The position numbers and the translations under genes are program-made. The notes under the pieces were generated by a model. That model had not been told where the DNA came from. It was given only the letters and a program-made list of their open reading frames with translations, and searched no databases. This document shows, piece after piece, positions 7,396 through 64,000 of a stretch of 64,000 nucleotides of DNA (position 1 is the first letter of the stretch; each line of letters starts with the position of its first letter). The stretch covers positions 310,001-374,000 of IMG/VR virus record IMGVR_UViG_3300018080_008436; one strand, 5' to 3'.

Positions 7396-7403
7396 ATTAA
7401 ATT

Positions 7404-29351: not shown

Positions 29352-29379
29352 ATTATAGCCAGCAATCCGCCGACTACAA
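29352..29379 (-). promoter_or_regulatory. sigma70-type promoter
   Basis: TTGTAG-N16-TATAAT. Confidence 0.55.
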
Positions 29380-30027
29380 GCAAAAATACGAAAATTCAAC
29401 AAAACCCATTTCCTCAGGTACATTTTCATATCTAACAACAAACCCATTTTCGAGCAATTCATAGACATAAAGTCTTGGAAAATCGAATGGGCCTGGATAC
29501 TCGTTTGAAGTTGTGCTACTGTCACTACTTAAAGATTGGCTTGAACTACTGGATGAGTCTTTTGAGCTAGAACTGGACGTACTGTCTGAACTAGGAGTAT
29601 CTTCGCTACTGGTGCTGGAAGAATCTAATGAGCTTGAACTAGAGGAATACTCTTGTGAGCTTGAACTAGGAGATCCTAAGCTACTTGAAGAAGATTCGCT
29701 TGCCTCTGTTGAGCTACTACTGCTTGATGAGTCTTTTGAGCTTGAAGAACTGGATTCAGTAGAAAGTGAAATTGAAGTAAGACTGGATTCAGAAGTTGGG
29801 CTTGATGAGCTTGATGAAGATATTCCCCCTATTGATAAACTTGATTCACTAGAAGAACTATATTCAATAGCTGGATTATAAATAGGTATAGAGGCCCATG
29901 TGATAATGGCACTCGTTATAGGATAACCAGTTATGATAGTAATATATCCATCTCCTGAACCAGCGTAAGCCTTCTTTCCTGTCAGGGGATAGTTATCAGA
30001 TCTTCTTAAATCGTATCGTCTTATCAT
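29374..30027 (-). CDS. Ser-rich protein
   Basis: Long poly-Ser tract between short globular ends. Confidence 0.8.
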   Translation of the reverse strand: MIRRYDLRRSDNYPLTGKKAYAGSGDGYITIITGYPITSAIITWASIPIYNPAIEYSSSSESSLSIGGISSSSSSSPTSESSLTSISLSTESSSSSSKDSSSSSSSTEASESSSSSLGSPSSSSQEYSSSSSSLDSSSTSSEDTPSSDSTSSSSSKDSSSSSSQSLSSDSSTTSNEYPGPFDFPRLYVYELLENGFVVRYENVPEEMGFVEFSYFCL

Positions 30028-33000
30028 TCTGGTAGCCTTTTGCTTATTGGAACGTTTATAATAGTTCCATCACTTGACCTCGGAATCCTTTTGGAAATAT
30101 TATACATTACTCCAATATGATGGATAACTGCGACCTCATCAGTGAAATTTGTTACTCTTGTTGCGACTCTGAATGATGACGCAAAGAACAAATCCATAAA
30201 TATAGTTGTCGATGGGTCCTGTGGAGCCAAGAATGTAATCGTCCCTTCAATATTATTGGCCGCGTATTCTGAAGAATCAATCAAAGTCCCTTGAGTCTCA
30301 TCCAGTCCAAGTCTATAAACATTCAGTGTAAAGTTTGCATTCCATCGACCATTAACAGCCGTATAAGTTTTGAAATCTTCTGTTTGTAATAATTCATTAA
30401 ACCTTGTGGGCAATATCGTATGTTGATCTGGAATGATGTTATAGTACTCTTCTGGTCTCAAGGATTCACTTTGAGTCATAAGGTATTCTACAGTAGAGTT
30501 CTCTGGGACATCTGCTTCGCTAGTTATATGAATTGAAGAAATGTATTCGTCATCGTCCAAGTTCACTGAGATTGGTTTGAAGAAAATAACGAATTCTCTT
30601 GGGTTGTAATAATCAACTTCTACTCCACCGTTAATTACTGGGGTTTGGAAATCAGAGTTTCCAACGAGTTTGATCTCATATTGAATATATTTCTGCAAAG
30701 CATCAATTGACTTGTCATGTTCATAAGGAATTGAATAGTCAATGAAGTCAGTCCAGTCAGAATATGTAATCCCATCTACACTAGTTCTTATTCTGTAGGT
30801 TACTTCTGCTCCTGTAGGAACGGTAACTCCCGCTATTACAGTAGTGTCTGGGATATTGGGATTCTCAAAGACAATCGTCCCAGTAAGAGTTGTTGTGTTA
30901 ATTTGTAAATTATTCCCTGATGCGATCTCATTACAAATACTATTTATTTGGGCTGAAGTGCTGTTATCTAAGTAGAATACAGACGATCCTCCCTCCTCTC
31001 CATATTTCTCAAGCAAGATAGAGTCAGATGCATGGGGTTGCCCTAATTGAATCGGAATTATCTGAACTTCACCCTCTCCATCAACAAAGTTGACAGTTTG
31101 TACAGCTTGATTTAAAGAATTCTCGGATGTATTCTCGTCGCCATCTGTGACAATGATTACAAATTTCTTATAGTCTTTGTAATCTTCGTTATTTGTTTGA
31201 TATTGGACCAATTGCTCTGCGGCTCTTTTTACTGCATCATGCAATTGACTTGCACCAAAGAAACCAAATGAATCGATTGCAGAGGCCAAGTAGATATCAT
31301 CACTTGTTAACTCTGGGACTCTATGTCTAATGGATGGATACCATTGTTGAATACTGGCCACATTGATGATGAATTGTCTTTCGGAAAGATAACCATCAGA
31401 CGTTGCAGAAACTCTGGCCTTAATATGCATGTAATCTCTTTTTACTCCTGCTCCCATTACCAAGAATCCAGGATCAGTTCCTTCTTCGTCTTCTGGTGGT
31501 TTGTATGGAAGTAGTTCAACAGTAATACGAGATCCATCAGTTACAATCTCTTCTGGTACGACAATTACATTCCCGATATCGTCAACGTACTGATACTCAG
31601 GGAACTTCGCATAAACACGAATATCAAAACCTCTTTCAGTTTCTTCGATATCGGTAGCAGTATAGAATGTTGCGGACGTATCTTCACTTCCAGCAGGGCC
31701 AGCAACTCCTGATTGAGATGAAGCTTCTTCTTCGTCCTCATAATCTAATATAAAGATTGGTTCACCATTATTAAGGTCGTTCCCCAATTCTATCTTAGTA
31801 GCAAGTCGTCTTGCCAATTCAGTTCCAGCAGGCACTTCGAGCGTAGCAAACATCATTCTGTTGCCTTCTGGATTCACAGGTTCATTTTCATATGGTTGCG
31901 AATTTGTGGGATCGTATCTAACTGTTCCATTTACAACAAAGTCTGTATCAATATTCTTTGTTGGAAGAATGTTCGTCATGGCAACACATCTGACATTATG
32001 AGAGTGACTTAACTGCTCATCTGATTCATAGCTGGTAAACGTATGAGTATGATTGCCAATTGAGCCGAACAAATTAATCGTACTTGTCGTAGTGCCATTC
32101 CCATTGATATCTAAGCTAATTACATGAGTGTGACTGCTTACTACTTCACCTCCGCTATCTTCGTCATATACGTCTGAACGAATTAAACCAGACTGAACAG
32201 AATAGTCAGACAAAGAAATGTCTTGGTTGGGACCGACAATCAAACAACCATCAATCAGGTTTCTTGTATCCTTCATCTGAGGTAACTGTCCACCAGAAGC
32301 ATTACTCTCTTCGCAAATTCCACTTTCAAATGTCACTTTTGGCAATGGATACTCTATTACTGACTCAAAATCGGTTCCCTCATTAATTGTGAGTTGATTG
32401 AGAATTGGTTGGCCTTTCCAAGTCAATTCAGCATAGATTCTTGCAGTAGTAACTCCATCTCTGACAAAATTAGTCTCATATTTTAGCTCAATACCAAGGG
32501 GTTCCACATATTGTTGTAGTGGTTTTGGAATTCTAATGCCACCACCAGGAGTGGGGAGTGGCCTTCCATTGGCGATTTCTCCTCTTCTGTATCCCCCTTC
32601 TTCCTTTCTGTAAGAGGTATATGCTTCAACCTGACTTAACCAAGGCTCTCTAAAGATCTCACGTTCTCCAAGAGGTTGCTGATGTCCAATATTTTTGTTT
32701 TTAGGAATGGCTGTTAACTCAAGCCTATCTGTTTGCCAAGTGGACCTTCTAGGGTTTGAATTGAATGTTGTTAAAGTTCTTGGTAAATCATTCGGTTGTC
32801 CCAAACCTCTAAGCCTTTTTACACCATCCTCTCCAACGAAAATGTCAGTTGGGTTGAAGTCATCTTGTAAATCCACTACAATTTTTGCGTTTGGATTACT
32901 TTCTCCATCAGCGTAGATAGGTGTCAGAGCGTCTTTTGCATAAAAAATGAATGAATCATCCTCATCTCCAAAGTTCTGACCAGTCAAGCTAACGATCCTT

Positions 33001-36000
33001 CTAACTTTTCTTACATATCCAGATGGATGGAAAACTTCAATATCTACATTAACATCCACAATTGGAGGGCAAAGTTCTGCCGCCGCCGCACCCGCTTCCC
33101 TTGGTTCAACTGGCTCTATTGGCCCAATGAATACCCCTCCAGCCCAACCATTATCAGTAACACTTGAGCTTGGCTCAACATTAAATTGTTTGGCTGATCT
33201 AAAAGAGAAGTTTACTTGGACGTTATCTTCAACAACTTCACTAGCGTCAAGATATTCCACGCCAGTCCCTATCTCATAAACTTCATTTTCAGCAGGGACC
33301 AAAACGCCTGGATTTACAGAAGTTATAGTAACTGGATTCGCTATGAAGAACATATCTGCTAATATTTGCTCATGTTGATCTCTGTCCCCAAACGATACAG
33401 AAGCTTCGATAAATAACAAGGAAACAATATCACTCGTTGGTATTGTTATAGAGGCTTTGCCATTAACTATTTCTAAAGAGAATTGATACTGCTCAAACTG
33501 TTTGGCATATGTCCATTCTGCTGGATCTTGATAGAAAAGTCCGCTTTCTTCCTCAGTATCTTGTTGAACAGATCCACCAACAAGTTCAATGTATTGATTA
33601 ATGATGTCATTTGCGTTAGTAGATCTGAGTCCAGTTCCAGAACTTGCACTTGGTGCGCTATCCGTCTCATTAACAGATTCAAGAACTTCTTCGAACGGAT
33701 TGTTTTGAACTATTTCTCTCCATTGATCGATAGCTGTTTTGGGTGTTTCCACAGGCTCCCCATTTTCATCAACAGCCACATTTTCCAATGGTCTTATATT
33801 AGCAAATTGTTGAGTTGTTGGATATGAAGAATCTTTATAAACAACATTTGATGCTGTTGCATCCAAATCAATCACTCTATTTGTATACAGAGTTATATTA
33901 ATGAATTGATCGTTAGCTAAAACAAACTCATCAGCCACAATATAATTAAGAGTAATTGTACTGCCATCAGAAGCATGATATCCTCTAACATACCTTTTCT
34001 CATATCGTGGAAAACAATCTAAGCTATCTTCATCTTTTGGAGCGGCTAGATAATATTGGACCCGATCTGATTCAACATAAGTACTGTCAATAACAATAGG
34101 GGAAATAAAAGAAACTTCAAATGGATCTAGATACAATCTAGCAAGAGTCCTCCCAGTTTCACCCATAAAATCGGCATATGCGAAAATCTCATAATCTTTC
34201 GAGAAGAATAAAGGATTTTCTATGCCAGGGATATTCAGCCCTTCAAAAGTTTTCTCCTCATATTCAGTGGCAAAACTCTGCATAGATGACGTAGCCAAAC
34301 CATTAGAGGTATATATTGGAGTTTCGATTACATAATCGACATCTTCTTCTGTGGCATCAGTTTCTTCAGCAGTTGGTAATTCTGTGGCCGTTTCTTGATC
34401 CCCATCATTTTGCTCTAATTGAGCTACAATATCCGTTTCAGGAGAGTATCTGAGTAATCGACTTAAATCTTCTTCTTTGTCTTTTACTGTTTCCAATATA
34501 TCTTCAACAATAGGAAGTACCCTTGCACAAACGTTACCATCAACAGTTGGCATATCAAGAGTTTGCCTCTGAGTAAATTTTTCTGCAAGATTCAAATCTT
34601 CATAAGGAGTTGATGGTGGAACTCTGTCGATATCATATGGTTTTAATAATGATGGATCAACATCTTTGTCATTAACAATTGGAGTCACATCAACGCTAAG
34701 TATCTCTGTCGCAAGAATATTATCTGTTGGAGTTAACTTCTCATCTGACGATTCGTTAAGTCTTATGGTTGTTCCCAATTCAGCAGAAACATCAAACAAA
34801 AGTGGATCGACAATATCAATGTATGGCCCAAGATTTGGATCAGTTCCAATCTCATCAATTTTGGTTGTTTGGATGTTACCTGATTTATCTAGAATATCAA
34901 TAATACTTTCTCTGAAATACCCCTCAGTAGATTGTACATAAATTCTTTTTTGGCCAGCAAACGATGGGTATGTTACAAAGGCTGATTCTATTTTGTCTTT
35001 TGCAAAAATGTCTGGCTCTTTATCAACTAACAAATTGACTTCTGTTCCGTCAGGGAACGGAGTTCCATCTTTCTCAAAGAAACTCATTGGAAGAAGGGCT
35101 GTCTGCCCAAAGAAGAAGATGTTATAACTCACCCATTCACTAAATGCTTCGAAATCCCACTCTAAATAGTAACCATCTGAATTCTGCAAATAAAAGACGA
35201 CATCTCTTGAGACCTTAGTATCTCTAACAAGGATGTTTGCGGTTGATCCGTTAATGTTTGTTATTTTGTTATAAGAACTGTCTTGAACAATACTGCCAGC
35301 TAAACTATTATTTGTGACAGCGAGGCGCACACCAGGATCGAAGGTTATTGTATTACTATCAATCTCTGTGATTGTATGGCCAATATTAGCGGCATCCCCT
35401 TGTAAGATATCTATTACATCTCCAACTTCAAAATCAGAAGCGTCTTCAACTGTTACAGTTGTGTCTCCAACATACAAAATGCTAGTAATATTGCTTTGCG
35501 TTATTCCTGCATTTGTTAGTAGCTTTCTGGAGATAAGATTTGTAGATGCAACGATATCTATGGACTCTTCATTATTTGGGGCATTATTCCCAAGAGTAAT
35601 TGAAGGAGATTCACTGCCAGGATAAAATAACTGCCAATTAGTAAGATTTACATCACTAATAACATTGAAGTCAACTTTGAAATCTCCAATATTGTATGTA
35701 TGGTTATTTTCAAGAGTCTTAAATCCATAAGCAATCATGGGATCTTCAACAGAAACAGCAGTAACTGATGAGAAATCTATTGTCGCATCACCAGTTCCAG
35801 AAACCAGATTCAAAGTCCCACTATCAATTGGACTAGTGTTACCATATGTAATTAAAGAAATCTGATCACTTTTTAGCTTATGTTGAACCGTAAACTCAGC
35901 ACCATTATTCTCATAAACAGCGTCAACATCAGCCTGAGAACCCGAAACATCAAAGATGTAAGTTGTTCTACTTGGGTTATTCAGGTCTAGGTTAATCGTT

Positions 36001-37940: not shown

Positions 37941-37942
37941 CT

Positions 37943-45484: not shown

Positions 45485-45493
45485 AATTTATCC

Positions 45494-54563: not shown

Positions 54564-54609
54564 AAGTTACACTCATATGATCATAGAATATCTAAACATT
54601 CTTCAATTT

Positions 54610-55701
54610 TTACTGCTCGTTTTCCTCTAACCATTTTTTAGCAAGCAAAGCCTTCCAATGATTATTCTTGACACTTTCTTGTATAGAAATGTGATCTTCT
54701 AGAGGATTTGTTAAGCAATCAAACATACATGGTTCAAATTCCCATGCGATTTTCTTCTCTTCTGCCCTTTTCCGAAGGTTGTTAACAAGATCGCATGACT
54801 TTTTGCAGTTTATGCATTCATTGTATACCATTTGCTCCCTCAACCTAGTGCAGAAAGTTCTGACATTATCCCTAAAAATCATTTTTGCATTTTCTTCGTA
54901 GTAATCAATGATTTTCTGGTATTCTTGTTTTTTCATGAACTCATAAATTGTATCAGCATATTCCCAAAGATGATTACCTATCTCTTCTGGATAACTCCTT
55001 TTGAGTTTCGGATCAATTTGATGTCGAGAGAAGTCCCCTTCTTCCAAGAAATTTTGAACCTTGCCTAATGTTTCATCAGGATACATGATAAGATCATCAA
55101 ACGAAATAACCAGAATAGGTATGTCTGGGTTCGCTAAAAGCCATTTGCATGCCTGATATGTTACGTTAATAAACATTTCGGGAGTATGAATCCTTAACCC
55201 TGACTCAACTTCTTCTTCATGAGTCATAAAAGGAAATCGTTTTAATCTTTCCTGAGATTTAGCAACTTGCCTTGGATCTCTAAGCATATAGATGATTTTG
55301 TCAATATATTCAGGATTACTGTTAAAAAGACCCTGGCTAACGATCTTGCATATTTGGCCATCAAGCTTAGGCATATTCATGTGCCACTTGATGCCTCTAA
55401 CTGAGTATCGGCATTCCCAGAATCCGTTAGGATTCATGTCTTTGCTAATCTTAAAATCTCTTTCGGCATTTGGGGCAACTATTTCTCTTATATATTGCCT
55501 GGCCTCAAACTCTTCATCTGTTTCTTCATCGTGTTTTTGTAGTCCAATCGCGATTCTTTGTTCCTGAGGAAATTTATGACCAATTATACGATCATCTCCA
55601 AAGGCTATGCGCAAGCAATCCATCATTAATGATGTGCCAGAACGAGGACACCCAGAAACAGTAATCAGACCTTTATTTTGTTGGTCAGAAGGAACATCCA
55701 T
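54610..55701 (-). CDS. sulfotransferase-family protein
   Basis: VSGCPRSGTSLMM PAPS loop, NP.GFWE, RDP..V..S. Confidence 0.8.
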   Translation of the reverse strand: MDVPSDQQNKGLITVSGCPRSGTSLMMDCLRIAFGDDRIIGHKFPQEQRIAIGLQKHDEETDEEFEARQYIREIVAPNAERDFKISKDMNPNGFWECRYSVRGIKWHMNMPKLDGQICKIVSQGLFNSNPEYIDKIIYMLRDPRQVAKSQERLKRFPFMTHEEEVESGLRIHTPEMFINVTYQACKWLLANPDIPILVISFDDLIMYPDETLGKVQNFLEEGDFSRHQIDPKLKRSYPEEIGNHLWEYADTIYEFMKKQEYQKIIDYYEENAKMIFRDNVRTFCTRLREQMVYNECINCKKSCDLVNNLRKRAEEKKIAWEFEPCMFDCLTNPLEDHISIQESVKNNHWKALLAKKWLEENEQ

Positions 55702-55762
55702 AATAATTCTCCATGTTATGCTAATAAATCCTTAAACATTATACATGAAGGGCTAGGTCAGA

Positions 55763-56500
55763 TTAATCAAAATAAGCAGGAATTGAGTTTTCTATCATAA
55801 TCCTGCTTACTGAACACTGGAGGTTGTTTAGATTATAAACATTGTCCAGTATCTGGAAAGGGATATCTTCAAAAACACTTGAACCTGAAGGGGCAGTTTG
55901 GCCAATGGCTGTATAGAAGGCGCTATTGACATCAAGATCATCAATAATTGGAACCCCACCACCAACAATATCTTGATCGTCAACTCGAATAACCATAGTT
56001 ACATCATTACCTATATAAGAAATCTCATCTTTATCCCAGAAAAATTCAATTTCAAAGCTAGTGTTTTTTGATATTGTGGTTTCGTCGTCTATCAATGAGT
56101 AACTGCCAGCGGAAGTTTTGACTCTAAATTCTATTCCATCTTTTGTAAAAAACGCTCCAATCCCTGGAGATTCAATATCTGTTTCGCCCATATTGACTCC
56201 CCAAAGCATATATTCCTTTTCTGAAAATCTAGCTGGGTGGATGACTCCATTCTGCAAATTAAATGGGAAAGACATGATTAATCCGACATATCCAGTTGAT
56301 ATAGAGAAAAGCTTGGATGCATCATCACAGAAGATTCTACCCTGATTATGCAAAGTTTTCTTTATTGATGACGCGAAATGAGGGGTTTCGTTATCCTCCA
56401 CGACCTCAAAGAAACCAGAATGACGCATTTCAGCCGCATTATCAATCAAAGGGTTGTGAATGCTTTTTAGGTCTTTTGTGTCGCTATAGTAAGTGATCAT
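55763..56500 (-). CDS. hypothetical protein
   Basis: 245 aa, AGGAG RBS. Confidence 0.75.
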   Translation of the reverse strand: MITYYSDTKDLKSIHNPLIDNAAEMRHSGFFEVVEDNETPHFASSIKKTLHNQGRIFCDDASKLFSISTGYVGLIMSFPFNLQNGVIHPARFSEKEYMLWGVNMGETDIESPGIGAFFTKDGIEFRVKTSAGSYSLIDDETTISKNTSFEIEFFWDKDEISYIGNDVTMVIRVDDQDIVGGGVPIIDDLDVNSAFYTAIGQTAPSGSSVFEDIPFQILDNVYNLNNLQCSVSRIMIENSIPAYFD

Positions 56501-56511
56501 TTGATTACTCC

Positions 56512-56952
56512 TTATGAATAGTCAAAGAACACCTTATATGCTCCATTTCCCGTTTCAAGATTAGTCGATCCAATCTCAATATCAAGATAGATGTAGTCAG
56601 ATACAGCAGAACTTTTGTTCCCTATATCTTCATTGTTTGCGTCTCCAGATGTTCCTGTCGTGTTGAGTCCAGAAAAGTGGTTAGACAATGGGGAAGATGC
56701 TACTGAGGAACTAAAATCTGGTGATGTTTCGATACCGAAATGGCCATCGTCCCCAGAAGTTACACTAATTCCGCCATTTGATATGACCCCCAGTTTGATA
56801 TTTCCTACTGCGGAAACATCATCAAACGCTATGTCGATGACCTTAACTCTACTATGAGTTCCAGAAGTTATTCTCCCAAAATCCAAAATAGAGACGTTGC
56901 CTAACAGAGCGCCACTCTCATTATGATACTCCCTAACTGTAATACTAGGCAT
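56512..56952 (-). CDS. hypothetical beta-rich structural protein
   Basis: Start MPSIT with AGGAG RBS. Confidence 0.7.
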   Translation of the reverse strand: MPSITVREYHNESGALLGNVSILDFGRITSGTHSRVKVIDIAFDDVSAVGNIKLGVISNGGISVTSGDDGHFGIETSPDFSSSVASSPLSNHFSGLNTTGTSGDANNEDIGNKSSAVSDYIYLDIEIGSTNLETGNGAYKVFFDYS

Positions 56953-56962
56953 AGTTTTCTCC

Positions 56963-59900
56963 TTATTTTTTAGGCATAATCCATTTTTTGGTTTGGACTT
57001 CGCTCCAGCCACTATCGGCTGAGTAAACCTGAATATTTACATAATATAGTTCTCCAGGAGTCAAGTTATCTCCTCCACCATAATAGATTGAGTTCAAGTC
57101 TGTTTCAATTATACCAGAGTCCCACTTGTCGCTCAAATATGGCTGAGAACCAACAAAAATTCTTACTTTTTCAACTGTTCCGATTTCTTTGATATGTTCG
57201 TTTTTAACAACCATGGCCGTATATTCAGTGACCCCACTGTCTACCCAACCTTGGAAAGTAAAGTCTTCGAAACTCAAGAACCCAACTAACCCACTTTGAA
57301 GAACGATAACCATTTGATTATTCTGCTCGTCATAATCAACTCCAATTGATCCAAAGAAATCGATCTCCGTTTCACTTGAAGAAGGATAAATATCAACCAT
57401 ACTAAAATCAGCATCTGAGAAATCTTCGTTCGCATCATTGACTTCTGCGGCAAGCCATTCCATTCTTATTTTGTAATCTGAAGCTATTTCCAAGGTTGCT
57501 GGAACATTCCAAGCAAACACTCCAGTGTTCGGAGTTGATGAAGTTATGGTTCTCAAAAATACATCTTCTTTATATAACTCAATCTTGACAGAATCATTAA
57601 TGGACTTGTTAGATTTCCATAATATCTCGACTTCTCCACCAATTAAAACATTCTCACCACCATTAGGATATTCAATCTCTACAGGTTGTGTTGCTGGAGT
57701 CGGATTATCTTCCTCATCGGGCTTAAACAAAACATTAGGAGACGTTGTAACATTGTATTCTCCGTTCAATGTATTGTAAGCGTGATGTTGAGCGACAAAC
57801 TGATCTCCCCCAGCATCAATCTCAGACAATCCATATAAGAAGTTGTTAGAACAGAACTTACAATATCTAGCCTGACCGTTGGTGAATCTTTCATTAATCA
57901 ATAATCTAAAGAAGTCTCTATCAAGAACTCTCAAATAACTATCATCGGACCCATTTAATGCAATCATAAGTTGACCGTTACTTGAAATGTCGAAATCTGA
58001 GATTTCATATCCCTCAATTCCATAGATTGCTGTGATTGATCCGTCATACTTCCAAAGAACATTCGTCCCAGCAACAAATGTTGAATTGTAATAATCGGAT
58101 TGTACGATTTTAAACGGAGCATCGAACCCATCAACTTCACTAACAGTTGTCAAAGCATCTGGGTCGAGTTCTTGAATCTTTCCTAACTCTGGCAGTGCTG
58201 TCCATATGTTAGTATCATACCACGACATAATTTGATAAACATTATCAACAGATGTATTCTCAGTTACAAAAAGTTGAGGTTGATCAGAGTTGTCAATGAA
58301 ATGTTCAATTGTATATTTCTTAAGTTTCTCATCTGTAGTGACATACATTTGTTGCCCTTCAGGATTAACAATAATGTTCTTAATTGTACCGTCCTCAGAG
58401 GTACTAAATGCTGATGCGGCTACATTTGAGTTATATTCGATTTTATAAAGTCTGTCGTCCGAAGTTCCAGCCCAAAATGATCCTGTTGAATCTTCTAATG
58501 GATTGTAAGAAACATTTGATGAAATTGCATCAGTAATTAAGTCTTGATTCCAAGTGAATTTAGGTATGATAAATGAGTATTTTACTTGTTCGTCTTTATA
58601 TTTTTCTTCCTGAATCCTAACACTGATATTTTTAACAGGAGAGTCTTTGACAATTAGATCCACATAAAAAATGGGTTCATGTTTAATGTTGACATCATCA
58701 TCTTCTGGAACATAACAATTGCTTGCTCCAGCGATTTCCTCAACATCTGGAGGATTCAGTAGATTGTCGTAATTGAAAAATTCATTATTAACAGTTCTAA
58801 ACGAGAATTGTATTTGTTGAGTGTCGTCATCTGAATCAAATCCACTTTGTGGAGTATAGGTAAATGGAATTAAGTTGTCTGGGTTATTTCCAGCAATGAT
58901 CTGGTTTAATACTTCTGTGAACTCATCTGGTAAGCTTGAAAAAGAAGATTCAGAAGAGGAGTTCACATCCCATTCGTCTCCGTCAACATCCTCGGATATT
59001 GCAAACATTAAAGAGCCATTATAAGCAATCGCTGGTCTTCCATCTACAACAGTTAAAGAAGTCCCCTCAGTATTGTTTGTCAATGAAGAGACAACCACTG
59101 GTGTTGGCCAATTCGTGCCATTTATATCTTCAGAACGAATATATCTTAATTGAGTGTCTACAGAAGCTTGATAACTAATCGCAGGATGTCCATTCACAAT
59201 GGCTAGGGAGTTCCAAACCCCGACATAGCCACTATCAACATCTTTTATGTTCCCCGCCGACCAATTTAACCCATCAGCATCGTCTGCGATAGTGTATTTT
59301 AGCTTAAAGCCATGGACATCATAATAGCTTACACAAGGCTTGCCATTGGTGATGGCTATAGACATATATCTATAACTTCCCGAATCAATTAAAAATCTAT
59401 TTGTAGAGGTCCAGCTAGACCCATTAGCATCATCTGCCTGAAGATAAGATAAAAATGAGCTTTTTCTGTATACTACTGCTGGCTTGCCATTTACCTCTGC
59501 TAAAGAAGATTCCCTAATGAAGTCTGGAGTATTGTCAACTTGCTTGACATTTCCTGCTGACCAATTTGATCCATCAGCGTCATCTGCTATTGCATATTTG
59601 ATATATTGATTAGTCTCATCCCAATATGATATTGCTGGCTTACCATTAATTATTGCCAAAGATGGATTGTGCCCCACGTCACCAAATGAATCTACTGTTT
59701 GGTAATTCGACCAACTTGAACCATCAGCATCATCTGATTGAATATAAATGAGGTTTTCTACAACAGAGTCATAATATGCTATCGCAGGTTTTCCGTTTAC
59801 AGAGGATAATGAAACCTCAAAACTAGAAGCCCCACCAGAAGAAATAGTTTTTATATTGCTGGATGGCCAGAAAAGGCCCTCTATATCACTGGCAATGACA

Positions 59901-60016
59901 TACTTTAATTGTGAATTGTCATCATCATAATATGCAATAGCTGGCTTGCCATTAATAACCGACAAGCTGGAGCTTGTCATGGTTGTTCCGCCAGAATCTA
60001 CTGTTATAATTGCCAT
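56963..60016 (-). CDS. beta-propeller repeat protein with YPNGGE Ig-like domain
   Basis: Seven NGKPAI.Y-type blades. Confidence 0.75.
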   Translation of the reverse strand: MAIITVDSGGTTMTSSSLSVINGKPAIAYYDDDNSQLKYVIASDIEGLFWPSSNIKTISSGGASSFEVSLSSVNGKPAIAYYDSVVENLIYIQSDDADGSSWSNYQTVDSFGDVGHNPSLAIINGKPAISYWDETNQYIKYAIADDADGSNWSAGNVKQVDNTPDFIRESSLAEVNGKPAVVYRKSSFLSYLQADDANGSSWTSTNRFLIDSGSYRYMSIAITNGKPCVSYYDVHGFKLKYTIADDADGLNWSAGNIKDVDSGYVGVWNSLAIVNGHPAISYQASVDTQLRYIRSEDINGTNWPTPVVVSSLTNNTEGTSLTVVDGRPAIAYNGSLMFAISEDVDGDEWDVNSSSESSFSSLPDEFTEVLNQIIAGNNPDNLIPFTYTPQSGFDSDDDTQQIQFSFRTVNNEFFNYDNLLNPPDVEEIAGASNCYVPEDDDVNIKHEPIFYVDLIVKDSPVKNISVRIQEEKYKDEQVKYSFIIPKFTWNQDLITDAISSNVSYNPLEDSTGSFWAGTSDDRLYKIEYNSNVAASAFSTSEDGTIKNIIVNPEGQQMYVTTDEKLKKYTIEHFIDNSDQPQLFVTENTSVDNVYQIMSWYDTNIWTALPELGKIQELDPDALTTVSEVDGFDAPFKIVQSDYYNSTFVAGTNVLWKYDGSITAIYGIEGYEISDFDISSNGQLMIALNGSDDSYLRVLDRDFFRLLINERFTNGQARYCKFCSNNFLYGLSEIDAGGDQFVAQHHAYNTLNGEYNVTTSPNVLFKPDEEDNPTPATQPVEIEYPNGGENVLIGGEVEILWKSNKSINDSVKIELYKEDVFLRTITSSTPNTGVFAWNVPATLEIASDYKIRMEWLAAEVNDANEDFSDADFSMVDIYPSSSETEIDFFGSIGVDYDEQNNQMVIVLQSGLVGFLSFEDFTFQGWVDSGVTEYTAMVVKNEHIKEIGTVEKVRIFVGSQPYLSDKWDSGIIETDLNSIYYGGGDNLTPGELYYVNIQVYSADSGWSEVQTKKWIMPKK

Positions 60017-60024
60017 TCTTTACC

Positions 60025-60846
60025 TCAAGGAATCGGCTGTTCTTCTAAGTAAGCCGTACCTAATAATTTATTATTATCTCTAAAAATCTGTTGTATGTAG
60101 TAATTGACAGTATCATTTATTATAACAAAAGCATTCCCAGAACTTCTATCTATACTGACACAAGTTAAATTCTCTAATCTCTCGTCCTTCAAATCGTTCT
60201 CAATGATCTGCTGAGTATCAAAATCAACCATATAAAGAACCGAATCTGCGACAAACCATAAACGATTCAAATTAGTGTCATAATCCATCGTGAAATTCTT
60301 AGGAAGCGTTGATAGATACGGCTTCTCATATTCAATTGTGGTTGAAGGGATTGTTCCAGGAAATTCAAACTCAAACAACGTTTCGCCAATATTATTTAAT
60401 TGAGTCACTTTCTGAGTTGAAGCGTCAACAAAACTCTTTACAAAAATCGTTCGATTATTCCTGTTAAGAATAATTGAATGTGGCAAAGTGAATCCTTCAA
60501 TTGAACGAATAAAAGAATTGTCAACAGAACTTAAAGACAAAACATTCCCATTACCCGCATCGGCTATCCAATATCTTCTATTAAATGGATTCCAAGCCGT
60601 ATCTAGAGGAAAATTAAGGTCCCCATAGTCCGTTATGGATTTGATCGTTGTTGCGCTATAATCATCGTTATTTGGGTTCTGAGGGTATAGTATGACGGTT
60701 CCATCATCTAACAATGGGTAACAGGTCAAAAACGTTCCATTAATAGGGTGAATTTTAATAGATTGAACTTCATCAATATTCTCGACTGTTCTAGTTTCGA
60801 GAAGACTGATTTCTCCTAAATTAATTGTATTGATTCTATCTGACAT
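60025..60846 (-). CDS. NHL-like beta-propeller protein
   Basis: LNFP.D...WIADAGNG.V. Confidence 0.65.
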   Translation of the reverse strand: MSDRINTINLGEISLLETRTVENIDEVQSIKIHPINGTFLTCYPLLDDGTVILYPQNPNNDDYSATTIKSITDYGDLNFPLDTAWNPFNRRYWIADAGNGNVLSLSSVDNSFIRSIEGFTLPHSIILNRNNRTIFVKSFVDASTQKVTQLNNIGETLFEFEFPGTIPSTTIEYEKPYLSTLPKNFTMDYDTNLNRLWFVADSVLYMVDFDTQQIIENDLKDERLENLTCVSIDRSSGNAFVIINDTVNYYIQQIFRDNNKLLGTAYLEEQPIP

Positions 60847-62985
60847 TTAGCACCCCCAATCTCCATTTCCTCTTTCCCATTTAATAGTTACTCCATCAGT
60901 TGTCAGAATATATCCAAATTGCCCATTAGCTATCTCTGATCCTAATGTCCATGTAGCAGGGTTTATATTGTCATTAGATAAGTTTATTGGATTTTGCCAA
61001 GTTCCTGAGTAATATCCAACGTATCTATTCCAGTCACCTCCATGACCATTGTTATCATAACGAACATTAAGGTACATCCATGTACTAGTATATCCAGTAT
61101 AATATATTGACACAAAGGCATTCATATTAATTCTGTCGTCACCTTCAGTTTGCCGCCAATATTCTCCACCAGGAGGGCCAGGATTACAATTATAATTATC
61201 TGGGCAAACTTCCTGAGGTTTCCCATTTGCAAATTGGCATCCAAGGAAACTTCTTTCTGTAGGTGTCTCTCCAGACCAAGATAAAGTAACAAATATTGTT
61301 GGACCTGTATCTCCAGGACAATTGCACTGAGGAAGTCCAGACGAACTTGAGCTAGAGGTAATTCCGAGAGAGCTATCACTACTTGAGGAATCCAAAGAAC
61401 TAGAAGAACTACTTGATGTACTAGAGGAACTACCCTCTCTTGCACCAGTACATTCATACATATATGCTTTCCCAGGATTTCCATCATTATAGATATATGA
61501 ACCAATCCCTATATAATCTCCATTAACTGCAACCTCATTATATGTTTGGTTACTTGGGTTTGGTTCTGTAAAATTCTGATAAAATATCCAAGAATCATCA
61601 ATCCATCTATATAGATTTTGTCCGATTAATAGTTGATCTCCATCTATAGAAGTCTGAAATGAAGTGGAACCTAAAGAAAATCCCTGAACATAATCCCATG
61701 AATCTCCATTCCACTCATATGCATAAACATATCTTGGATTGTTTTGGGAAATTGTCATTCTATCCCCATTAATCCTTACGAGATAACCAAGCCCATCATT
61801 TGGAGTTGGCCCAGTGAAAGTTTGAATATGTTTCCATTTGCCATTTATTCTTTCATAAGCGTATGCCCTACCCCTTTCGCCATATTCTCTACGAGCACCA
61901 ACAATTGCATGATCTCCATAAATAGATACTGCGTTTCCAAAATACCCATTAGATTCTGCGTTGGGAGATGAGAGTCTTTTCTCTAGATACCATGTGCTCC
62001 CACTTCTTGCATAAATATAAGCCAACCCACCATTTGTTTCATAAGTACCTTGATATGCTCCAATAATAATCCTATCCCCACTCATATAGCATGATACGCC
62101 AAAATAATCATCAATATTAGGATCTTGTATAATTTGATGCTGAACCCATGATGATCCATTCCATCTATAAATAAATAGATATCCCTCTTCCCTTTCTGTG
62201 GTTATAGCACAATAATTTCCTCCATCATATGCAACCTGCCATCCGAAATGCCGATACAGAGAACTATCTGCTTCGATCATTTGCTTTTGAGTCCAAGAAC
62301 CATTTTCCAATTCATAATAAAAAACTTTCCCATATGAGTCCAAACTGTCATAATGACTAGCCCCAACAAACATTTTTTTACCAGAGATCTTTATTTGTGT
62401 ACCATATCTGTCACCGTTTATTGGCCCCTCAATGGCTTGTTTGTATTCGAAACACCCATCATTAAAACTTGATGACGAACTATTTGGAAGACAGGCATGT
62501 TCACAAACTTCAATTGTTTGCCCCTTCTCGTATTTAGAACTTGCGCTGAGATTGTCAAGGGTAATAACATCCTCTGCACCTTTGTTTACATAAGTTCCTT
62601 GATCAACTCCATCTATACAAACAGTTCCTTCAGGTATTACCCCCAAAAATGGAGGTGGAGAGAACCACATAGTGCCGTGAGATTGCGAAATGTTTCCGAT
62701 TGCTGTTGTTACACAAATAAGAGAGCTAGAAGAAGAAATATTCTCCAAAGATTCCGAAGATGAAGATTCCCCACCAATAGATTCAGAGCTTTCTGAAATT
62801 GAGCTTGGCATGAAGCTATCAGATGACGAACTAACAAGTTCACATTCCAAACAGGTTGAGAAAGTTCCCTCAATACTTAATGGATCAGTATCGACAGGGT
62901 CATAGGTTCTCTCAGTGTACGTATAGCACGTCCCCTCTATCCTAACTGTCTTCCCCTGATATTCTTCAAATACTATATGTCCCAT
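60847..62985 (-). CDS. FG-GAP repeat protein with poly-Ser linkers and Cys-containing C-terminal module
   Basis: YFG.AVSI.GD.AIVGA repeats. Confidence 0.8.
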   Translation of the reverse strand: MGHIVFEEYQGKTVRIEGTCYTYTERTYDPVDTDPLSIEGTFSTCLECELVSSSSDSFMPSSISESSESIGGESSSSESLENISSSSSLICVTTAIGNISQSHGTMWFSPPPFLGVIPEGTVCIDGVDQGTYVNKGAEDVITLDNLSASSKYEKGQTIEVCEHACLPNSSSSSFNDGCFEYKQAIEGPINGDRYGTQIKISGKKMFVGASHYDSLDSYGKVFYYELENGSWTQKQMIEADSSLYRHFGWQVAYDGGNYCAITTEREEGYLFIYRWNGSSWVQHQIIQDPNIDDYFGVSCYMSGDRIIIGAYQGTYETNGGLAYIYARSGSTWYLEKRLSSPNAESNGYFGNAVSIYGDHAIVGARREYGERGRAYAYERINGKWKHIQTFTGPTPNDGLGYLVRINGDRMTISQNNPRYVYAYEWNGDSWDYVQGFSLGSTSFQTSIDGDQLLIGQNLYRWIDDSWIFYQNFTEPNPSNQTYNEVAVNGDYIGIGSYIYNDGNPGKAYMYECTGAREGSSSSTSSSSSSSLDSSSSDSSLGITSSSSSSGLPQCNCPGDTGPTIFVTLSWSGETPTERSFLGCQFANGKPQEVCPDNYNCNPGPPGGEYWRQTEGDDRINMNAFVSIYYTGYTSTWMYLNVRYDNNGHGGDWNRYVGYYSGTWQNPINLSNDNINPATWTLGSEIANGQFGYILTTDGVTIKWERGNGDWGC

Positions 62986-62998
62986 TATTCACTCCTAC

Positions 62999-64000
62999 TT
63001 ATGGACAGTTCTCATTTCCTGTTGTTGGAACGTAATTCAAAGAGCCATTTTTCCAACTACCCCAAGGTTGTCCTGATCCCGAAATTGGCTCCCACTTAAT
63101 AGTAACTCCCTCTAAGTGACCCGACGTAACAGTACATTTCCCAAACATGATGTCTCTAATGTCAGTGTAAGCCGAAGCGCTACTCCCCCAAACCCCACAC
63201 AATGTTGTTGGAGATACGTTAATCATATTGTCTACATTAAAGTGAGGATTGCAACCAGTTGTTGTACCATATCCTCCACCTTCATTATAGTTCAAACCTA
63301 CATAAAACTGGGCTTGGTTATTTCTTATTATAACTGCTATGTCTGCTTCTCCTGGGCTATATCCACTTCCTTGGTCTACACTGAGTCGAACTGAGTCATC
63401 TATGGCTATTCTCCAAACTTCTCTGCCTGAAGTCCAGTAATTGCTTGGACAAATTATTTTACTCTCCCCATTTTCCCACTCTTCTCTTAAGAAAACCCTA
63501 AGACCTGGACCACTCCAACAAAGTGTCATTTTTACTCTTGGATCGGAATTCCCCTCACAATTTATCTGATCTAACGCATCGCTTTCAGAACTAGAAGAGC
63601 TAATAGAACTACTGCCCAAACTGCTCTCACTTGAGTCAGAACTGAACAAGAGACTGCTTTTACTTGATTCAGATGAAGATGTATTTCCAATACTTTCTGA
63701 GGAACTACTAATTGATTCACTAATTGAACTGATACTTTCAGTAAATAGCTCGCATGCATCATATCGCCAATTTAAGAAACCTGATGAATCTGATGAAGAA
63801 GACGGAGGATCAAAACTAGAACTCGATTCAGAAATGGTTATACTTGATTCACTTGAACTTGAATCAGATCCGACAACCCCAGAACTTGACGACTCAGAAT
63901 TTCCTAAGGAACTTGACTCGGATTGTGAACTGGAAGATTGTGAAATCGAACTTGATGACTCAGAATAATTCTCACTTGAGGAGCTAGACGAAGGACTAGA
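62999..64000 (-). CDS. Ser-rich protein with Cys-containing C-terminal module, 5' end outside the window
   Basis: Frame of the 62999..63649 ORF stays open to position 64000. Confidence 0.8.
   Translation of the reverse strand, partial: SSPSSSSSSENYSESSSSISQSSSSQSESSSLGNSESSSSGVVGSDSSSSESSITISESSSSFDPPSSSSDSSGFLNWRYDACELFTESISSISESISSSSESIGNTSSSESSKSSLLFSSDSSESSLGSSSISSSSSESDALDQINCEGNSDPRVKMTLCWSGPGLRVFLREEWENGESKIICPSNYWTSGREVWRIAIDDSVRLSVDQGSGYSPGEADIAVIIRNNQAQFYVGLNYNEGGGYGTTTGCNPHFNVDNMINVSPTTLCGVWGSSASAYTDIRDIMFGKCTVTSGHLEGVTIKWEPISGSGQPWGSWKNGSLNYVPTTGNENCP

What the first reader, a model, noticed from the sequence alone, without database searches (positions are those of the whole stretch)
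29374..64000. Block of poly-serine-linked adhesin-like proteins with an embedded sulfotransferase
Seen: at least eight ORFs carry Ser tracts (up to ~245 aa) separating propeller, FG-GAP, LamG, LRR and vWA modules. No obvious signal peptides. A sulfotransferase lies within the block and two GT-A glycosyltransferases at 15295-16844. Established: bacterial serine-rich repeat adhesins are O-glycosylated by linked GTs. Inference: a mucin-like, glycosylated and possibly sulfated virion fibre coat.
Basis: partly seen in the sequence, partly recalled or inferred. Interest (0 to 1): 0.6.

Follow-up and report, generated by a model that had tools for sequence, protein, structure and literature searches.

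The report
Poly-serine-linked tail fibre genes with sulfotransferase
A half-megabase phage from marine sediment builds its tail-end receptor-binding proteins from folded modules joined by long acidic poly-serine spacers, and carries among them a sulfotransferase that many unrelated phages also keep beside their tail-tip genes, which suggests an undescribed sulfate modification linked to phage attachment.

Summary
The poly-Ser tracts are real. They mix all six Ser codons and are mostly not DNA tandem repeats. The tracts separate FG-GAP and BNR propellers, LamG, Ig-like, LRR-like and marginal vWA modules. No ORF has a signal-peptide-like or membrane-spanning segment.

The window lies in a 476-kb IMG/VR phage record. 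The block follows a 2077-aa tape-measure-like gene and four large ORFs, so it sits in the baseplate and tail-fibre slot, not in a capsid "coat". A related phage keeps the same gene order and linker positions. Its linker lengths differ and the modules after the linkers are exchanged.

The sulfotransferase is a well-folded PAPS-type enzyme. Across phages its homologues sit next to genes ending in a new ~170-aa C-terminal "X" domain. Two block proteins carry that domain. In small siphophages the X proteins lie 3-4 genes after the tape measure, often followed by APS kinase, glycosyltransferases and methyltransferases.

The genome also has its own APS kinase, a second sulfotransferase and a 30-kb glycosylation island. 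The linkers are Ser/Glu-rich and poor in Thr and Pro, so they are not mucin-like. Modification of the fibres is inferred, not shown.

The parts
62999..64000 (-). 3' part of a 785-aa ORF (genome 372999-375356). It has a conserved N-terminal ~390 aa, poly-Ser tracts at aa 388-595, and a C-terminal X-like domain at aa 594-770 (window 63047-63577).
   Evidence: The N-terminal half is 44.5% identical to the L019 orthologue. The C-terminal module differs between the two phages.
60847..62985 (-). 712-aa modular protein. Order of parts: 52-aa family N-terminal domain (62830-62985), Ser linker, Cys-bounded module 2, Ser linker, FG-GAP propeller (about 61501-62448), Ser tract at aa 514-552, and X-like C-terminal domain (60850-61341).
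   Evidence: FG-GAP_2 at 1.4e-23. The N-terminal domain is shared by at least 19 paralogues. X-like domain.
60025..60846 (-). 273-aa ORF with no known family, conserved in the related phage.
   Evidence: 56% identity to the L018/L019 orthologue at the same position. No Pfam or PHROG hit.
56963..60016 (-). 1017-aa protein with a BNR-like propeller at the N-terminus and Ig-like domains (Kre9_KNH at aa 784-853, Ig_Rha78A_N-like). It has no Ser tract.
   Evidence: The C-terminal 650 aa are 60% identical to the L018 orthologue, which lacks the N-terminal propeller.
55763..57012 (-). Two small conserved ORFs (166 aa at 56512-57012 and 245 aa at 55763-56500) directly upstream of the sulfotransferase. 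Function unknown.
   Evidence: 75% and 56% identity to the L018/L019 orthologues in the same order. No family hits.
54610..55701 (-). PAPS-type sulfotransferase of 363 aa: catalytic domain at aa ~7-262, plus a Cys-rich C-terminal extension.
   Evidence: Sulfotransfer_1 at 27.3 bits against a cut-off of 22. GCPRSGTS and RxPxxVAKSQ motifs are conserved in 50 homologues. AF2 pLDDT is 91.7. VIA Z is 12.5-11.6 to CurM ST, TPST1/2 and OLS ST. There are 443 metagenomic homologues.
51288..54563 (-). 1091-aa protein: conserved N-terminal 300 aa, Ser tracts at 302-365, FG-GAP propeller, Ser tract at 701-749, BNR-like propeller.
50938..51297 (-). 119-aa ORF conserved in the relative.
   Evidence: 63% identity to the L018 orthologue.
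48500..50938 (-). 812-aa protein that starts with a 71-aa Ser tract, then a globular part with a Kre9_KNH Ig-like domain.
   Evidence: It is 62% identical to the L018 orthologue, which carries a tract at the same place, aa 1-71.
45494..48499 (-). 1001-aa protein: N-terminal domain, short Ser run, LamG (47084-47470), 252-aa Ser/Glu tract (46271-47026), LRR-like C-terminal module.
   Evidence: Laminin_G_3 at 2.2e-13, LRR_4 below cut-off, phrog_7816 at 1e-17. Contigs break inside the tract.
37943..45484 (-). 2513-aa protein with propeller repeats (Reg_prop, BNR-like) and no Ser tract.
   Evidence: No match in GenBank phages.
30024..37940 (-). 2638-aa protein. Three Ser tracts (aa 1-61, 157-190, 285-388) flank two ~95-aa Cys-rich modules. 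About 2250 aa follow, with marginal vWA matches at 30954-31286 and 36033-36188.
29374..30027 (-). 217-aa ORF that is 37% Ser (tract at aa 55-177). Last gene of the block; it overlaps the upstream ORF by 4 nt.
3991..7489 (-). Five phage tRNA-Ser genes (anticodons GGA, UGA, CGA, GCU, GCU) that together read all six Ser codons.
   Evidence: aragorn. A link to the Ser-rich proteome is an inference.
15295..16844 (-). Two divergent GT-A-like ORFs (238 and 278 aa) in the replication and nucleotide-metabolism module. They are not part of the block and their target is unknown.

Best explanation
The block is the distal-tail (baseplate and tail-fibre) gene module of a ~0.5-Mb tailed phage found in marine sediment and seawater.

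It encodes very large receptor-binding, adhesin-like proteins. Their folded modules include FG-GAP and BNR propellers, LamG, Ig-like, LRR-like and possibly vWA domains, plus a previously undescribed ~170-aa C-terminal 'X' domain. These modules are strung on acidic poly-Ser spacers.

The spacers appear to do two things. They act as long, flexible, protease-poor, non-sticky tethers that let binding modules reach out. They also act as junctions where modules are exchanged.

The embedded enzyme is an active-looking PAPS-dependent sulfotransferase from a phage clade that travels with X-domain tail-tip genes. It is supplied by a phage APS kinase. It most likely sulfates the fibre proteins themselves, or glycans attached to them, before assembly.

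Shown: the tracts, the modules, the position behind the tape-measure gene, synteny with module swapping, the sulfotransferase fold and motifs, and the gene linkage across phages.

Inferred: presence of these proteins in the virion, the tether role, and any sulfation or glycosylation of the fibres.
For: Context:
- The record is a 476-kb IMG/VR virus, 98% complete by CheckV.
- On the minus strand the order is: a 2077-aa ORF matching tape measure (phrog_167, 6e-18, plus a glycine zipper), then ORFs of 512, 907, 900 and 1455 aa, then the block, then a metallophosphoesterase, then replication genes.

Relative L018/L019:
- It has the same gene order, with the sulfotransferase in the same slot (71% identity).
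- Ser tracts lie at the same positions but differ in length: 297-554 against 302-365, and 496-686 against 492-743.
- N-terminal parts are 44-66% identical, while the modules after the linkers differ. For example, the G000 protein ends in an X-like domain where the L019 orthologue has FG-GAP.

Paralogues:
- At least 19 share a 52-aa N-terminal domain followed directly by a Ser linker.
- Their C-terminal modules vary: LamG, DUF285, FG-GAP or X.
- A constant anchor with variable tips is the usual pattern for receptor-binding proteins.

Sulfotransferase:
- Motifs, fold and model quality are given.

Linkage in other phages:
- In the 5 non-self loci, of 28 viral loci in all, that have a poly-Ser ORF nearby, that ORF is the immediate neighbour, with a gap of 19-444 nt.
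- X or X-like domain ORFs sit beside the sulfotransferase in at least 12 loci.
- X and X-like are homologous: hhalign probability 95.9%, E 6e-9.
- In L069 and L070 the order is tape measure, two genes, X protein(s), sulfotransferase (followed in L069 by an APS kinase).

Other support:
- G000 has its own APS kinase at 1.4e-43.
- Predicted complex of the sulfotransferase with the X-like domain gave weak support. The score was 0.47 (runs 0.53, 0.47, 0.01) with a best control of 0.00. The mark was reached by 58 of 80 solved complexes and 2 of 110 mismatched pairs. At scores of 0.60 or under, only 7 of those 80 reached it, as did both mismatches. The runs agree in at least 33% of contacts, and partner pLDDT is at least 68.
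Against: - No block protein matches a known tail-fibre or baseplate family in PHROGs or Pfam. No sheath (PF04984) or terminase (PF03237) match was found in the genome. The tail assignment therefore rests on one tape-measure match plus gene order.
- The four ORFs between the tape measure and the block are unannotated.
- 20 of 28 sulfotransferase loci have no Ser- or Thr-rich neighbour. The enzyme does not need poly-Ser.
- Fold ranking does not reveal the substrate: CurM ST, TPSTs, OLS ST, Stf9 and Teg12 tie within 1 Z unit.
- The X-like model matches no known fold (best Z 5.2). Its binding role is assumed from its position.
- The complex prediction is only weak support.
Confidence: 0.6

Rival explanations
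1. The sulfotransferase, and the glycosylation genes, act on host envelope glycans rather than on the fibres. An example would be sulfating the receptor that the neighbouring X-domain tip recognises. That could block superinfection or stop progeny from sticking to debris. On this reading the poly-Ser tracts are plain unmodified linkers.
For: - Receptor-binding genes and receptor-modifying genes often travel together in phages (own knowledge, for example seroconversion genes beside tailspike genes). Adjacency to X proteins fits this reading equally well.
- Neighbours in several loci are typical glycan-building enzymes: GFO_IDH_MocA, hexapeptide acetyltransferase, GT2, GT9, Methyltransf_21.
- 20 of 28 sulfotransferase loci have no Ser- or Thr-rich protein nearby.
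- Viral sulfotransferases are usually listed as auxiliary metabolic genes (PMC10829341).
Against: - In all 5 non-self loci that have a poly-Ser ORF, it is the immediate neighbour of the sulfotransferase.
- The sulfotransferase keeps its slot inside the fibre operon in G000 and in L018/L019.
- The complex prediction gives weak support for direct contact with the X-like domain: score 0.47, best control 0.00.
Confidence: 0.22
2. The proteins form a mucin-like, O-glycosylated and sulfated fibre layer coating the virion, including the capsid, as seen on some giant viruses and glycosylated mycobacteriophages.
For: - Genome 240-272 kb holds GT2-like genes (3-4), GT1/GT4-like genes (4), Glyco_transf_7C, NeuB (8e-33), a CMP-sugar synthetase (7e-19), methyltransferases, a second sulfotransferase (2.7e-21) and a weak Maf/MptE-like ORF (1.2e-5).
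- In L059, two poly-Ser ORFs, the sulfotransferase and homologues of three island genes lie within 15 kb.
- The genome has 33 poly-Ser ORFs with 4742 linker residues in total.
- Phage virion glycosylation has a precedent in mycobacteriophages (own knowledge; referred to in PMC11256854).
Against: - The block sits behind the tape measure, not with head genes.
- The linkers are poor in Thr and Pro (1.9% and 0.5%) and rich in Glu, unlike mucin PTS domains.
- There is no glycosyltransferase inside the block.
- No capsid association has been shown.
Confidence: 0.13
3. The proteins are not virion parts. They act inside or on the infected cell, for example as disordered scaffolds or condensate formers, or as effectors released at lysis. 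The sulfotransferase is then an unrelated metabolic or DNA/nucleotide-modifying gene.
For: - No homology to known structural proteins.
- Long Ser/Glu tracts are intrinsically disordered.
- A paper states that glycosylation- and sulfation-type nucleotide modification has been reported in phages (PMC10829341).
Against: - The extracellular-type binding modules (FG-GAP, LamG, Ig-like, BNR, DUF285) fit surface recognition.
- Position after the tape measure, and tail-tip linkage of the sulfotransferase in small siphophages.
- No thymidylate-synthase-type hydroxymethylase was found in the genome.
Confidence: 0.05

Closest known systems
Polyserine linkers of secreted carbohydrate-active enzymes in marine Cellvibrionaceae (Saccharophagus degradans, Teredinibacter turnerae; PMC2386152 and PMC2699552, listed)
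   Same: Long, nearly pure Ser runs placed exactly between folded binding or catalytic modules. Many proteins in one genome carry them. The habitat is marine.
   Different: Here they are in a phage, in proteins without signal peptides, in the tail module, and with regular Glu/Gln interruptions. The hosts of this phage are unknown, so a shared origin was not tested.
Modular phage tail fibres and receptor-binding proteins (conserved N-terminal anchor, exchangeable C-terminal tips)
   Same: Position downstream of the tape measure. The N-terminal part is conserved and the C-terminal modules are swapped between relatives. A paralogue family shares one N-terminal domain.
   Different: There is no sequence match to any known fibre family. 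The joints are disordered poly-Ser spacers rather than coiled-coil or beta-helical shafts. Proteins reach 2638 aa.
Serine-rich repeat adhesins of Gram-positive bacteria (Fap1, GspB, SraP)
   Same: Very Ser-rich regions flanking binding domains. The idea of O-glycosylation by linked enzymes.
   Different: No KxYKxGKxW signal peptide, no LPXTG motif, no SecA2/Y2 system, no adjacent GtfA/B, and irregular S/E tracts rather than dipeptide repeats.
PAPS-dependent sulfotransferases (Pfam Sulfotransfer_1/3; CurM ST, TPST1/2, Stf9, Teg12, HS 3-OST)
   Same: The fold, the 5'-PSB loop (PRSGTS) and the 3'-PB motif. Z is 12.5-10.3.
   Different: Sequence identity is only 13-20%. There is an extra ~100-aa C-terminal domain with five conserved Cys. 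The clade is phage-specific and linked to tail-tip genes. The substrate is unknown.
Glycosylated mycobacteriophage virions and glycosylated giant-virus fibrils
   Same: A virus-encoded sugar-modifying toolkit together with Ser-rich structural proteins.
   Different: Modification is not shown here. The glycosyltransferases are about 100 kb from the block. A sulfation arm (sulfotransferase plus APS kinase) is not part of those systems as far as I know.

Membership tests
PAPS-dependent sulfotransferase | 5'-phosphosulfate-binding loop (PxxGTT/S) near the N-terminus | tested here: met
   GCPRSGTS at aa 17-24, at least 90% conserved in 50 homologues.
PAPS-dependent sulfotransferase | 3'-phosphate-binding motif (R...S) and the sulfotransferase alpha/beta fold | tested here: met
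   R141, P143 and S149 are invariant. The model has pLDDT 91.7. VIA Z is 12.5 with rmsd 3.6 over 182 aa to 4gbm, and Z is 12.3 to 5wrj. The profile hits SULT and CurM ST at 6e-5 to 1e-4.
PAPS-dependent sulfotransferase | Sulfotransfer activity with PAPS | not testable with these tools
   Supporting context only: a phage APS kinase at 1.4e-43, and APS kinase adjacent to the sulfotransferase in G001, L051 and L069.
Tyrosylprotein sulfotransferase (TPST/RaxST-like) | Closest structural class and conserved acidic Tyr acceptor sites in the presumed substrate | tested here: inconclusive
   TPSTs fill the top 12 Foldseek rows, but TM is only 0.26-0.36. They tie with CurM and OLS sulfotransferases by Z. 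The S-S-S-E-x-Y-S-E-S motif of G000 linkers covers 76 Tyr, but Phe fills the same slot 44 times. The motif is absent from linkers of other sulfotransferase-linked phages.
Phage tail fibre / baseplate module | Location downstream of the tape-measure gene in the same orientation | tested here: met
   phrog_167 at 6e-18 for the 2077-aa ORF at genome 386980-393213. Four ORFs, then the block, all on the minus strand.
Phage tail fibre / baseplate module | Conserved N-terminal part with exchangeable distal modules among relatives and paralogues | tested here: met
Phage tail fibre / baseplate module | Homology to characterised fibre or baseplate proteins | tested here: not met
   No PHROG structural hit for any block ORF. 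No GenBank phage match for the 2513-aa ORF.
Phage tail fibre / baseplate module | Presence in the virion | not testable with these tools
   Needs proteomics or imaging.
Serine-rich repeat adhesin (SRRP) | Long N-terminal signal peptide, LPXTG anchor, accessory Sec system and adjacent GtfA/B | tested here: not met
   No hydrophobic N-terminus. No LPXTG or KxYKxGKxW motif. No glycosyltransferase in the block.
Mucin-like (PTS) domain | Pro/Thr/Ser-rich composition | tested here: not met
   Linkers are S 65%, E 12%, Q 6%, T 1.9%, P 0.5%.
Polyserine linker (PSL) architecture | Ser-dominated spacers between independently folding modules, recurring in many proteins of one genome | tested here: met
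   67 tracts in 33 ORFs, median 44 aa, maximum 481 aa, lying between Pfam-defined modules.
Polyserine linker (PSL) architecture | Occurrence in secreted carbohydrate-active enzymes | tested here: not met
   No signal peptides. No glycoside-hydrolase family hits in the block.
GT-A glycosyltransferase (ORFs 15295-16011 and 16008-16844) | N-terminal Rossmann motif, DxD motif and a profile match above threshold | tested here: inconclusive
   Motifs are present by inspection: LDDD at 103-106 and DSD at 70-72. Profile matches are below cut-off: PF00535 at 16.6 bits, PglI at 6.7e-4, phrog_14775 at 6e-5. The Atlas feature score is 0.98 to 'putative glycosyltransferase' clusters.

The most novel reading that the evidence does not exclude
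Phages of several lineages carry a dedicated sulfation cassette beside their tail-tip genes: a sulfotransferase of this clade, often with APS kinase, glycosyltransferases and methyltransferases. The cassette sulfates the receptor-binding proteins after translation. Sulfation could be direct, or could fall on O-glycans carried by poly-Ser spacers or by the new X domain. This would be a new kind of virion modification that gives fibres a polyanionic, glycosaminoglycan-like surface.
Probability: 0.28. Interest if true: 0.8.

Novelty: new variant of a known kind. Interest (0 to 1): 0.62.

Why it matters
Tail fibres decide which cells a phage can attach to.

Here an uncultured megaphage builds them in an unusual way. 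Dozens of binding modules are tethered by acidic poly-Ser spacers. Those spacers also appear to be the points where modules are exchanged between relatives.

The wider point is a conserved gene pairing: tail-tip 'X' proteins with a sulfotransferase, often accompanied by APS kinase, in phages from about 55 kb to about 500 kb. The papers searched here treat viral sulfotransferases as generic auxiliary metabolic genes.

If the enzyme modifies the fibre or its receptor, sulfation becomes a new variable in phage adsorption and host range. It can be tested directly by co-expression and mass spectrometry.

The work also defines two new domain families: the 52-aa N-terminal anchor-like domain, and the X domain with 549 cluster representatives.

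Tried and rejected
1. Tyr-sulfation of the linkers. G000 linkers show a striking S-S-S-E-x-Y-S-E-S-S-S context, and TPSTs top the Foldseek list. Three results count against it. Phe fills the same slot 44 times against 76 for Tyr. TPSTs tie with other sulfotransferases by Z. The motif is absent from linkers of other sulfotransferase-linked phages, and nearly absent from the close relative. I kept it only as a minor variant of the novel case.

2. Obligatory link between the sulfotransferase and poly-Ser. Rejected, because 20 of 28 loci have no Ser- or Thr-rich neighbour. The more general partner is the X domain.

3. Fold of the X-like domain. The model has pLDDT 73.6. The best PDB match is Z 5.2, and BFVD E-values are above 0.2. 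No assignment was possible.

4. Word-based homologue search for the X-like domain found only the query itself. The exhaustive profile search was needed.

5. Structural genes by Pfam. Sheath (PF04984) and terminase (PF03237) gave no match. Atlas look-alikes for the 907-aa ORF scored below 0.9 and are leads only.

6. Other genome checks. No seryl-tRNA synthetase-type core (PF00587) and no thymidylate-synthase-type enzyme (PF00303) were found.

7. GenBank phages. No match for the sulfotransferase or the 2513-aa ORF.

8. The family N-terminal domain was found in IMG/VR only in this same phage.

9. Literature. No paper in the library links polyserine or serine-rich tracts with phage fibres, or sulfotransferases with tail fibres in this sense.

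10. Artefact reading (wrong frame or simple repeat). Rejected on mixed codons, few tandem arrays, conserved positions in a relative, and identical flanking contigs in an independent run.

Full report
**1. What the sequence shows**

All long ORFs in the window lie on the minus strand. GC is 37-41%. I scored a tract as at least 12 Ser in any 20 residues. By that rule seven ORFs between 29374 and 64000 carry tracts:

- 29374-30027 (217 aa, 37% Ser)
- 30024-37940 (2638 aa, three tracts)
- 45494-48499 (1001 aa, including a 252-aa tract at aa 492-743)
- 48500-50938 (812 aa, which begins with a 71-aa tract)
- 51288-54563 (1091 aa)
- 60847-62985 (712 aa)
- 62999-64000, which runs on to genome coordinate 375356 (785 aa)

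The 2513-aa ORF 37943-45484 has no tract. The length estimate of about 245 aa is right.

The tracts use AGT, TCA, TCT, AGC, TCC and TCG together. Only four short tandem arrays occur in the 34.6 kb. They are therefore kept at the protein level and are not simple DNA repeats.

Pfam gives these module matches:

- FG-GAP_2: 1.4e-23 and 1.8e-7
- Laminin_G_3: 2.2e-13
- Reg_prop: 4.4e-7
- Kre9_KNH Ig-like: 1.6e-7 and 3.2e-5
- BNR and LRR: below cut-off

A vWA match in the 2638-aa ORF just reaches the cut-off at 23.8 bits. A hydropathy scan finds no signal-peptide-like or membrane-spanning stretch in any long ORF. There are no LPXTG or SRRP signal motifs.

**2. What genome this is**

The window is bases 310001-374000 of a single 476,248-bp IMG/VR virus record, rated 98% complete by CheckV. 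The same proteins also occur on a 524,692-bp contig.

Upstream in the window are phage-type replication genes: DnaB-like helicase, primase, SNF2 helicase, Dam methylase and dCMP deaminase. There is also a ClpB-like AAA+ protein.

The genome encodes 59 tRNAs and a tmRNA. Five tRNA-Ser genes lie in the window at 3991-7489, and together they read all six Ser codons.

The stretch 45494-50938 is held by runs from two sediment metagenomes and one seawater metagenome. In one run, contigs are identical on both sides of the long tract. All short-read contigs break inside it, with alternative joints that skip 78-183 nt. The exact tract length is therefore unverified and may vary.

**3. Poly-Ser is a genome-wide building principle**

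Thirty-three ORFs carry tracts. With a slightly looser threshold there are 67 tracts totalling 4742 residues. Composition is:

- Ser 65%, Glu 12%, Gln 6%
- Thr 1.9%, Pro 0.5%
- Lys plus Arg 1.1%

These are acidic poly-Ser spacers, not mucin-type Pro/Thr/Ser domains.

The 712-aa ORF belongs to a family of at least 19 paralogues. They share a 52-aa N-terminal domain with invariant Y9, G11, C20, Y21, P35, C45, L46 and C48. That domain is followed directly by a Ser linker. A subset has a second Cys-bounded module, and the C-terminal modules vary: LamG, DUF285, FG-GAP or X. A constant N-terminal piece with variable tips is what one expects of receptor-binding proteins docking onto one site.

**4. 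Position in the genome**

Reading along the minus strand:

- A 2077-aa ORF at genome 386980-393213 matches the tail tape-measure family (phrog_167, 6e-18) and has a glycine zipper.
- ORFs of 512, 907, 900 and 1455 aa follow.
- Then comes the block: 785, 712, 273, 1017, 166 and 245 aa, the sulfotransferase, then 1091, 119, 812, 1001, 2513, 2638 and 217 aa.
- A metallophosphoesterase and the replication genes come next.

This is the slot where tailed phages keep baseplate and fibre genes. The assignment is weakened by two results. No block protein matches a known structural family. Pfam sheath and terminase models found nothing in the genome.

**5. A relative with the same block**

A sulfotransferase homologue with 71% identity lies on contigs L018/L019 (GC 32-33%) in the same gene order. 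The orthologues are 44-75% identical.

Ser tracts sit at the same places but have different lengths. The tract at aa 1-71 of the 812-aa protein is matched by a tract at aa 1-71 in its 811-aa orthologue. Others are 297-554 against 302-365, and 496-686 against 492-743.

Sequence before a linker is conserved, while what follows can be a different module. The G000 785-aa protein ends in an X-like domain. Its orthologue carries an FG-GAP propeller there. The 1001-aa protein has an LRR-like end that the orthologue lacks. The linkers therefore behave as module-exchange joints.

**6. The sulfotransferase**

Pfam Sulfotransfer_1 scores 27.3 bits against a cut-off of 22. There are 443 metagenomic homologues. 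In 50 of them the PAPS-binding loop GCPRSGTS and the R/S 3'-phosphate motif are conserved, as are five Cys in a C-terminal extension.

The AlphaFold model has pLDDT 91.7. It aligns to solved sulfotransferases at Z 12.5-10.3. CurM ST, TPST1/2, the olefin-synthase ST, Stf9 and Teg12 are tied. Tyrosylprotein sulfotransferases lead the Foldseek list, but with low TM scores. The fold is certain. The substrate class is not.

The genome has its own APS kinase (1.4e-43), so it can help supply PAPS. A second sulfotransferase (2.7e-21) lies in a 30-kb island at genome 240-272 kb. That island also holds about eight glycosyltransferase-like genes, NeuB, a CMP-sugar synthetase, methyltransferases, a BNR sialidase-like protein and a weak Maf/MptE-like ORF.

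**7. What the sulfotransferase travels with**

Twenty-eight IMG/VR loci carry homologues at 30-49% identity.

- Six, including this phage, have a poly-Ser ORF within 10 kb.
- In all five non-self cases it is the immediate neighbour, 19-444 nt away.
- Two further loci have Thr/Ser-rich proteins nearby.

A more general partner emerged. This is a ~170-aa C-terminal domain, here called X. It has a C..DP..LTV.G...W.G.TW...G..K..CP..Y start and a G-I-T-Y-x-W-x-x-G-x-G-W end. It is encoded directly upstream of the sulfotransferase in many loci. The C-termini of the window's 785-aa and 712-aa proteins are homologous to it: hhalign probability 95.9%, E 6e-9. A profile built from these X-like domains hits further sulfotransferase neighbours.

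In total at least 12 lineages pair an X-superfamily protein with the sulfotransferase.

An exhaustive profile search finds 549 cluster representatives. The domain is always at the C-terminal end, mostly in ~200-aa proteins.

I sampled contexts in the reverse direction:

- In two ~55-58-kb phages the order is tape measure, two genes, a tandem pair of X proteins, then the sulfotransferase. One also has an APS kinase. The other has methyltransferase and glycosyltransferase-like genes downstream.
- A third contig has X, X, a split sulfotransferase and a GT9/GT2 gene.
- Two short contigs have no sulfotransferase.

X proteins therefore occupy the tail-tip slot, and the sulfation genes follow them.

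The X-like model (pLDDT 73.6) is beta-rich and matches no known fold convincingly.

A complex prediction of the sulfotransferase with the window's X-like domain gave weak support:

- The score was 0.47 (runs 0.53, 0.47, 0.01), and the best control was 0.00.
- The mark was reached by 58 of 80 solved complexes and 2 of 110 mismatched pairs.
- At scores of 0.60 or under, only 7 of those 80 solved complexes reached it, as did both mismatches.
- The runs agree in at least 33% of contacts, and partner pLDDT is at least 68.

**8. Interpretation**

The best-supported reading is a tail-fibre and baseplate module whose binding domains are tethered by acidic poly-Ser spacers. A sulfotransferase belongs functionally to the tail-tip genes.

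Two questions stay open. One is whether the enzyme sulfates the fibre proteins, glycans on them, or the host receptor glycan that the tips recognise. The other is whether the Ser tracts are glycosylated at all.

"Coat" and "mucin-like" are not. The two GT-A-like ORFs it cites (15295-16844) look like real but divergent GT-A enzymes. They sit beside dCMP deaminase and the primase, far from the block, so they give no support for fibre glycosylation. The glycosylation island and locus L059 are better arguments. In L059, poly-Ser ORFs, the sulfotransferase and homologues of three island genes lie within 15 kb.

**9. Novelty**

Polyserine linkers are known in secreted enzymes of marine bacteria (PMC2386152, PMC2699552). 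Modular fibres and phage virion glycosylation are also known.

I found no paper in the library that describes any of the following:

- poly-Ser-linked phage fibres;
- the X domain;
- the 52-aa N-terminal family;
- a conserved pairing of tail-tip genes with a sulfotransferase and APS kinase.

One survey lists viral sulfotransferases only as generic auxiliary genes (PMC10829341). I rate this a new variant of a known kind, with a testable and more novel possibility of sulfated virion fibres.

Noticed in passing
window 3991-7489 (genome 313991-317489), minus strand: A cluster of five tRNA-Ser genes (anticodons GGA, UGA, CGA, GCU, GCU) reads all six Ser codons. It is part of a set of 59 tRNAs plus a tmRNA. 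It may serve the very Ser-rich late proteome. No seryl-tRNA-synthetase-type core was found.
   Followed up: partly
genome 409748-409822 (outside the window): A tRNA with anticodon CUA, called 'Pyl' by aragorn, so a possible amber suppressor. The block ORFs are open under table 11. Recoding was not examined.
   Followed up: no
genome 400083-401171 (L011:6083-7171, minus strand): A phage-encoded actin-like protein: Pfam Volactin at 3.3e-63 and MreB_Mbl at 1e-7. It lies a few genes upstream of the tape-measure gene.
   Followed up: no
genome 240000-272500 (L034, L035): A 30-kb island holds about eight glycosyltransferase-like genes, NeuB, a CMP-sugar synthetase, several SAM methyltransferases, a second sulfotransferase, a BNR_2 sialidase-like protein, NUDIX, a kinase/HAD phosphatase and a RecD2-like helicase. 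It lies directly downstream of the largest poly-Ser paralogue cluster.
   Followed up: partly
genome 97610-98155, plus strand (L023): An APS kinase (PF01583, 1.4e-43) lies on the opposite strand to nearly all other genes. Its homologue sits next to the sulfotransferase in G001, L051 and L069.
   Followed up: yes
genome 208568-216151 (L007:8568-16151, minus strand): A 2527-aa ORF that is 49% Ser, with 13 tracts of up to ~490 aa and no Pfam domain. A homologue of one of its non-Ser parts lies directly upstream of the sulfotransferase in L037.
   Followed up: partly
genome 202378-237869 and 290760-300660; window 60847-62985: At least 19 paralogues share a new 52-aa N-terminal domain with three conserved Cys. 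In IMG/VR it was found only in this phage, although L020 has a 365-aa protein with a similar N-terminus next to its sulfotransferase.
   Followed up: partly
window 11619-13931, minus strand: A ClpB/Hsp104-like double AAA+ chaperone of 770 aa (phrog_4871, 1.9e-207), unusual for a phage. It could help handle long disordered proteins. That idea is speculation.
   Followed up: no
window 46325-46822: Short-read contigs from three public runs all end inside the long Ser tract. Alternative joints there skip 78, 170 or 183 nt, so there is either an assembly ambiguity or real length variation.
   Followed up: partly
whole record: IMG/VR classes the 476-kb record as a 'provirus', and the same proteins occur on a 524,692-bp contig. 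The record may be a trimmed piece of a larger contig. A 296-kb IMG/VR record from the same metagenome is 100% identical over the parts compared.
   Followed up: no
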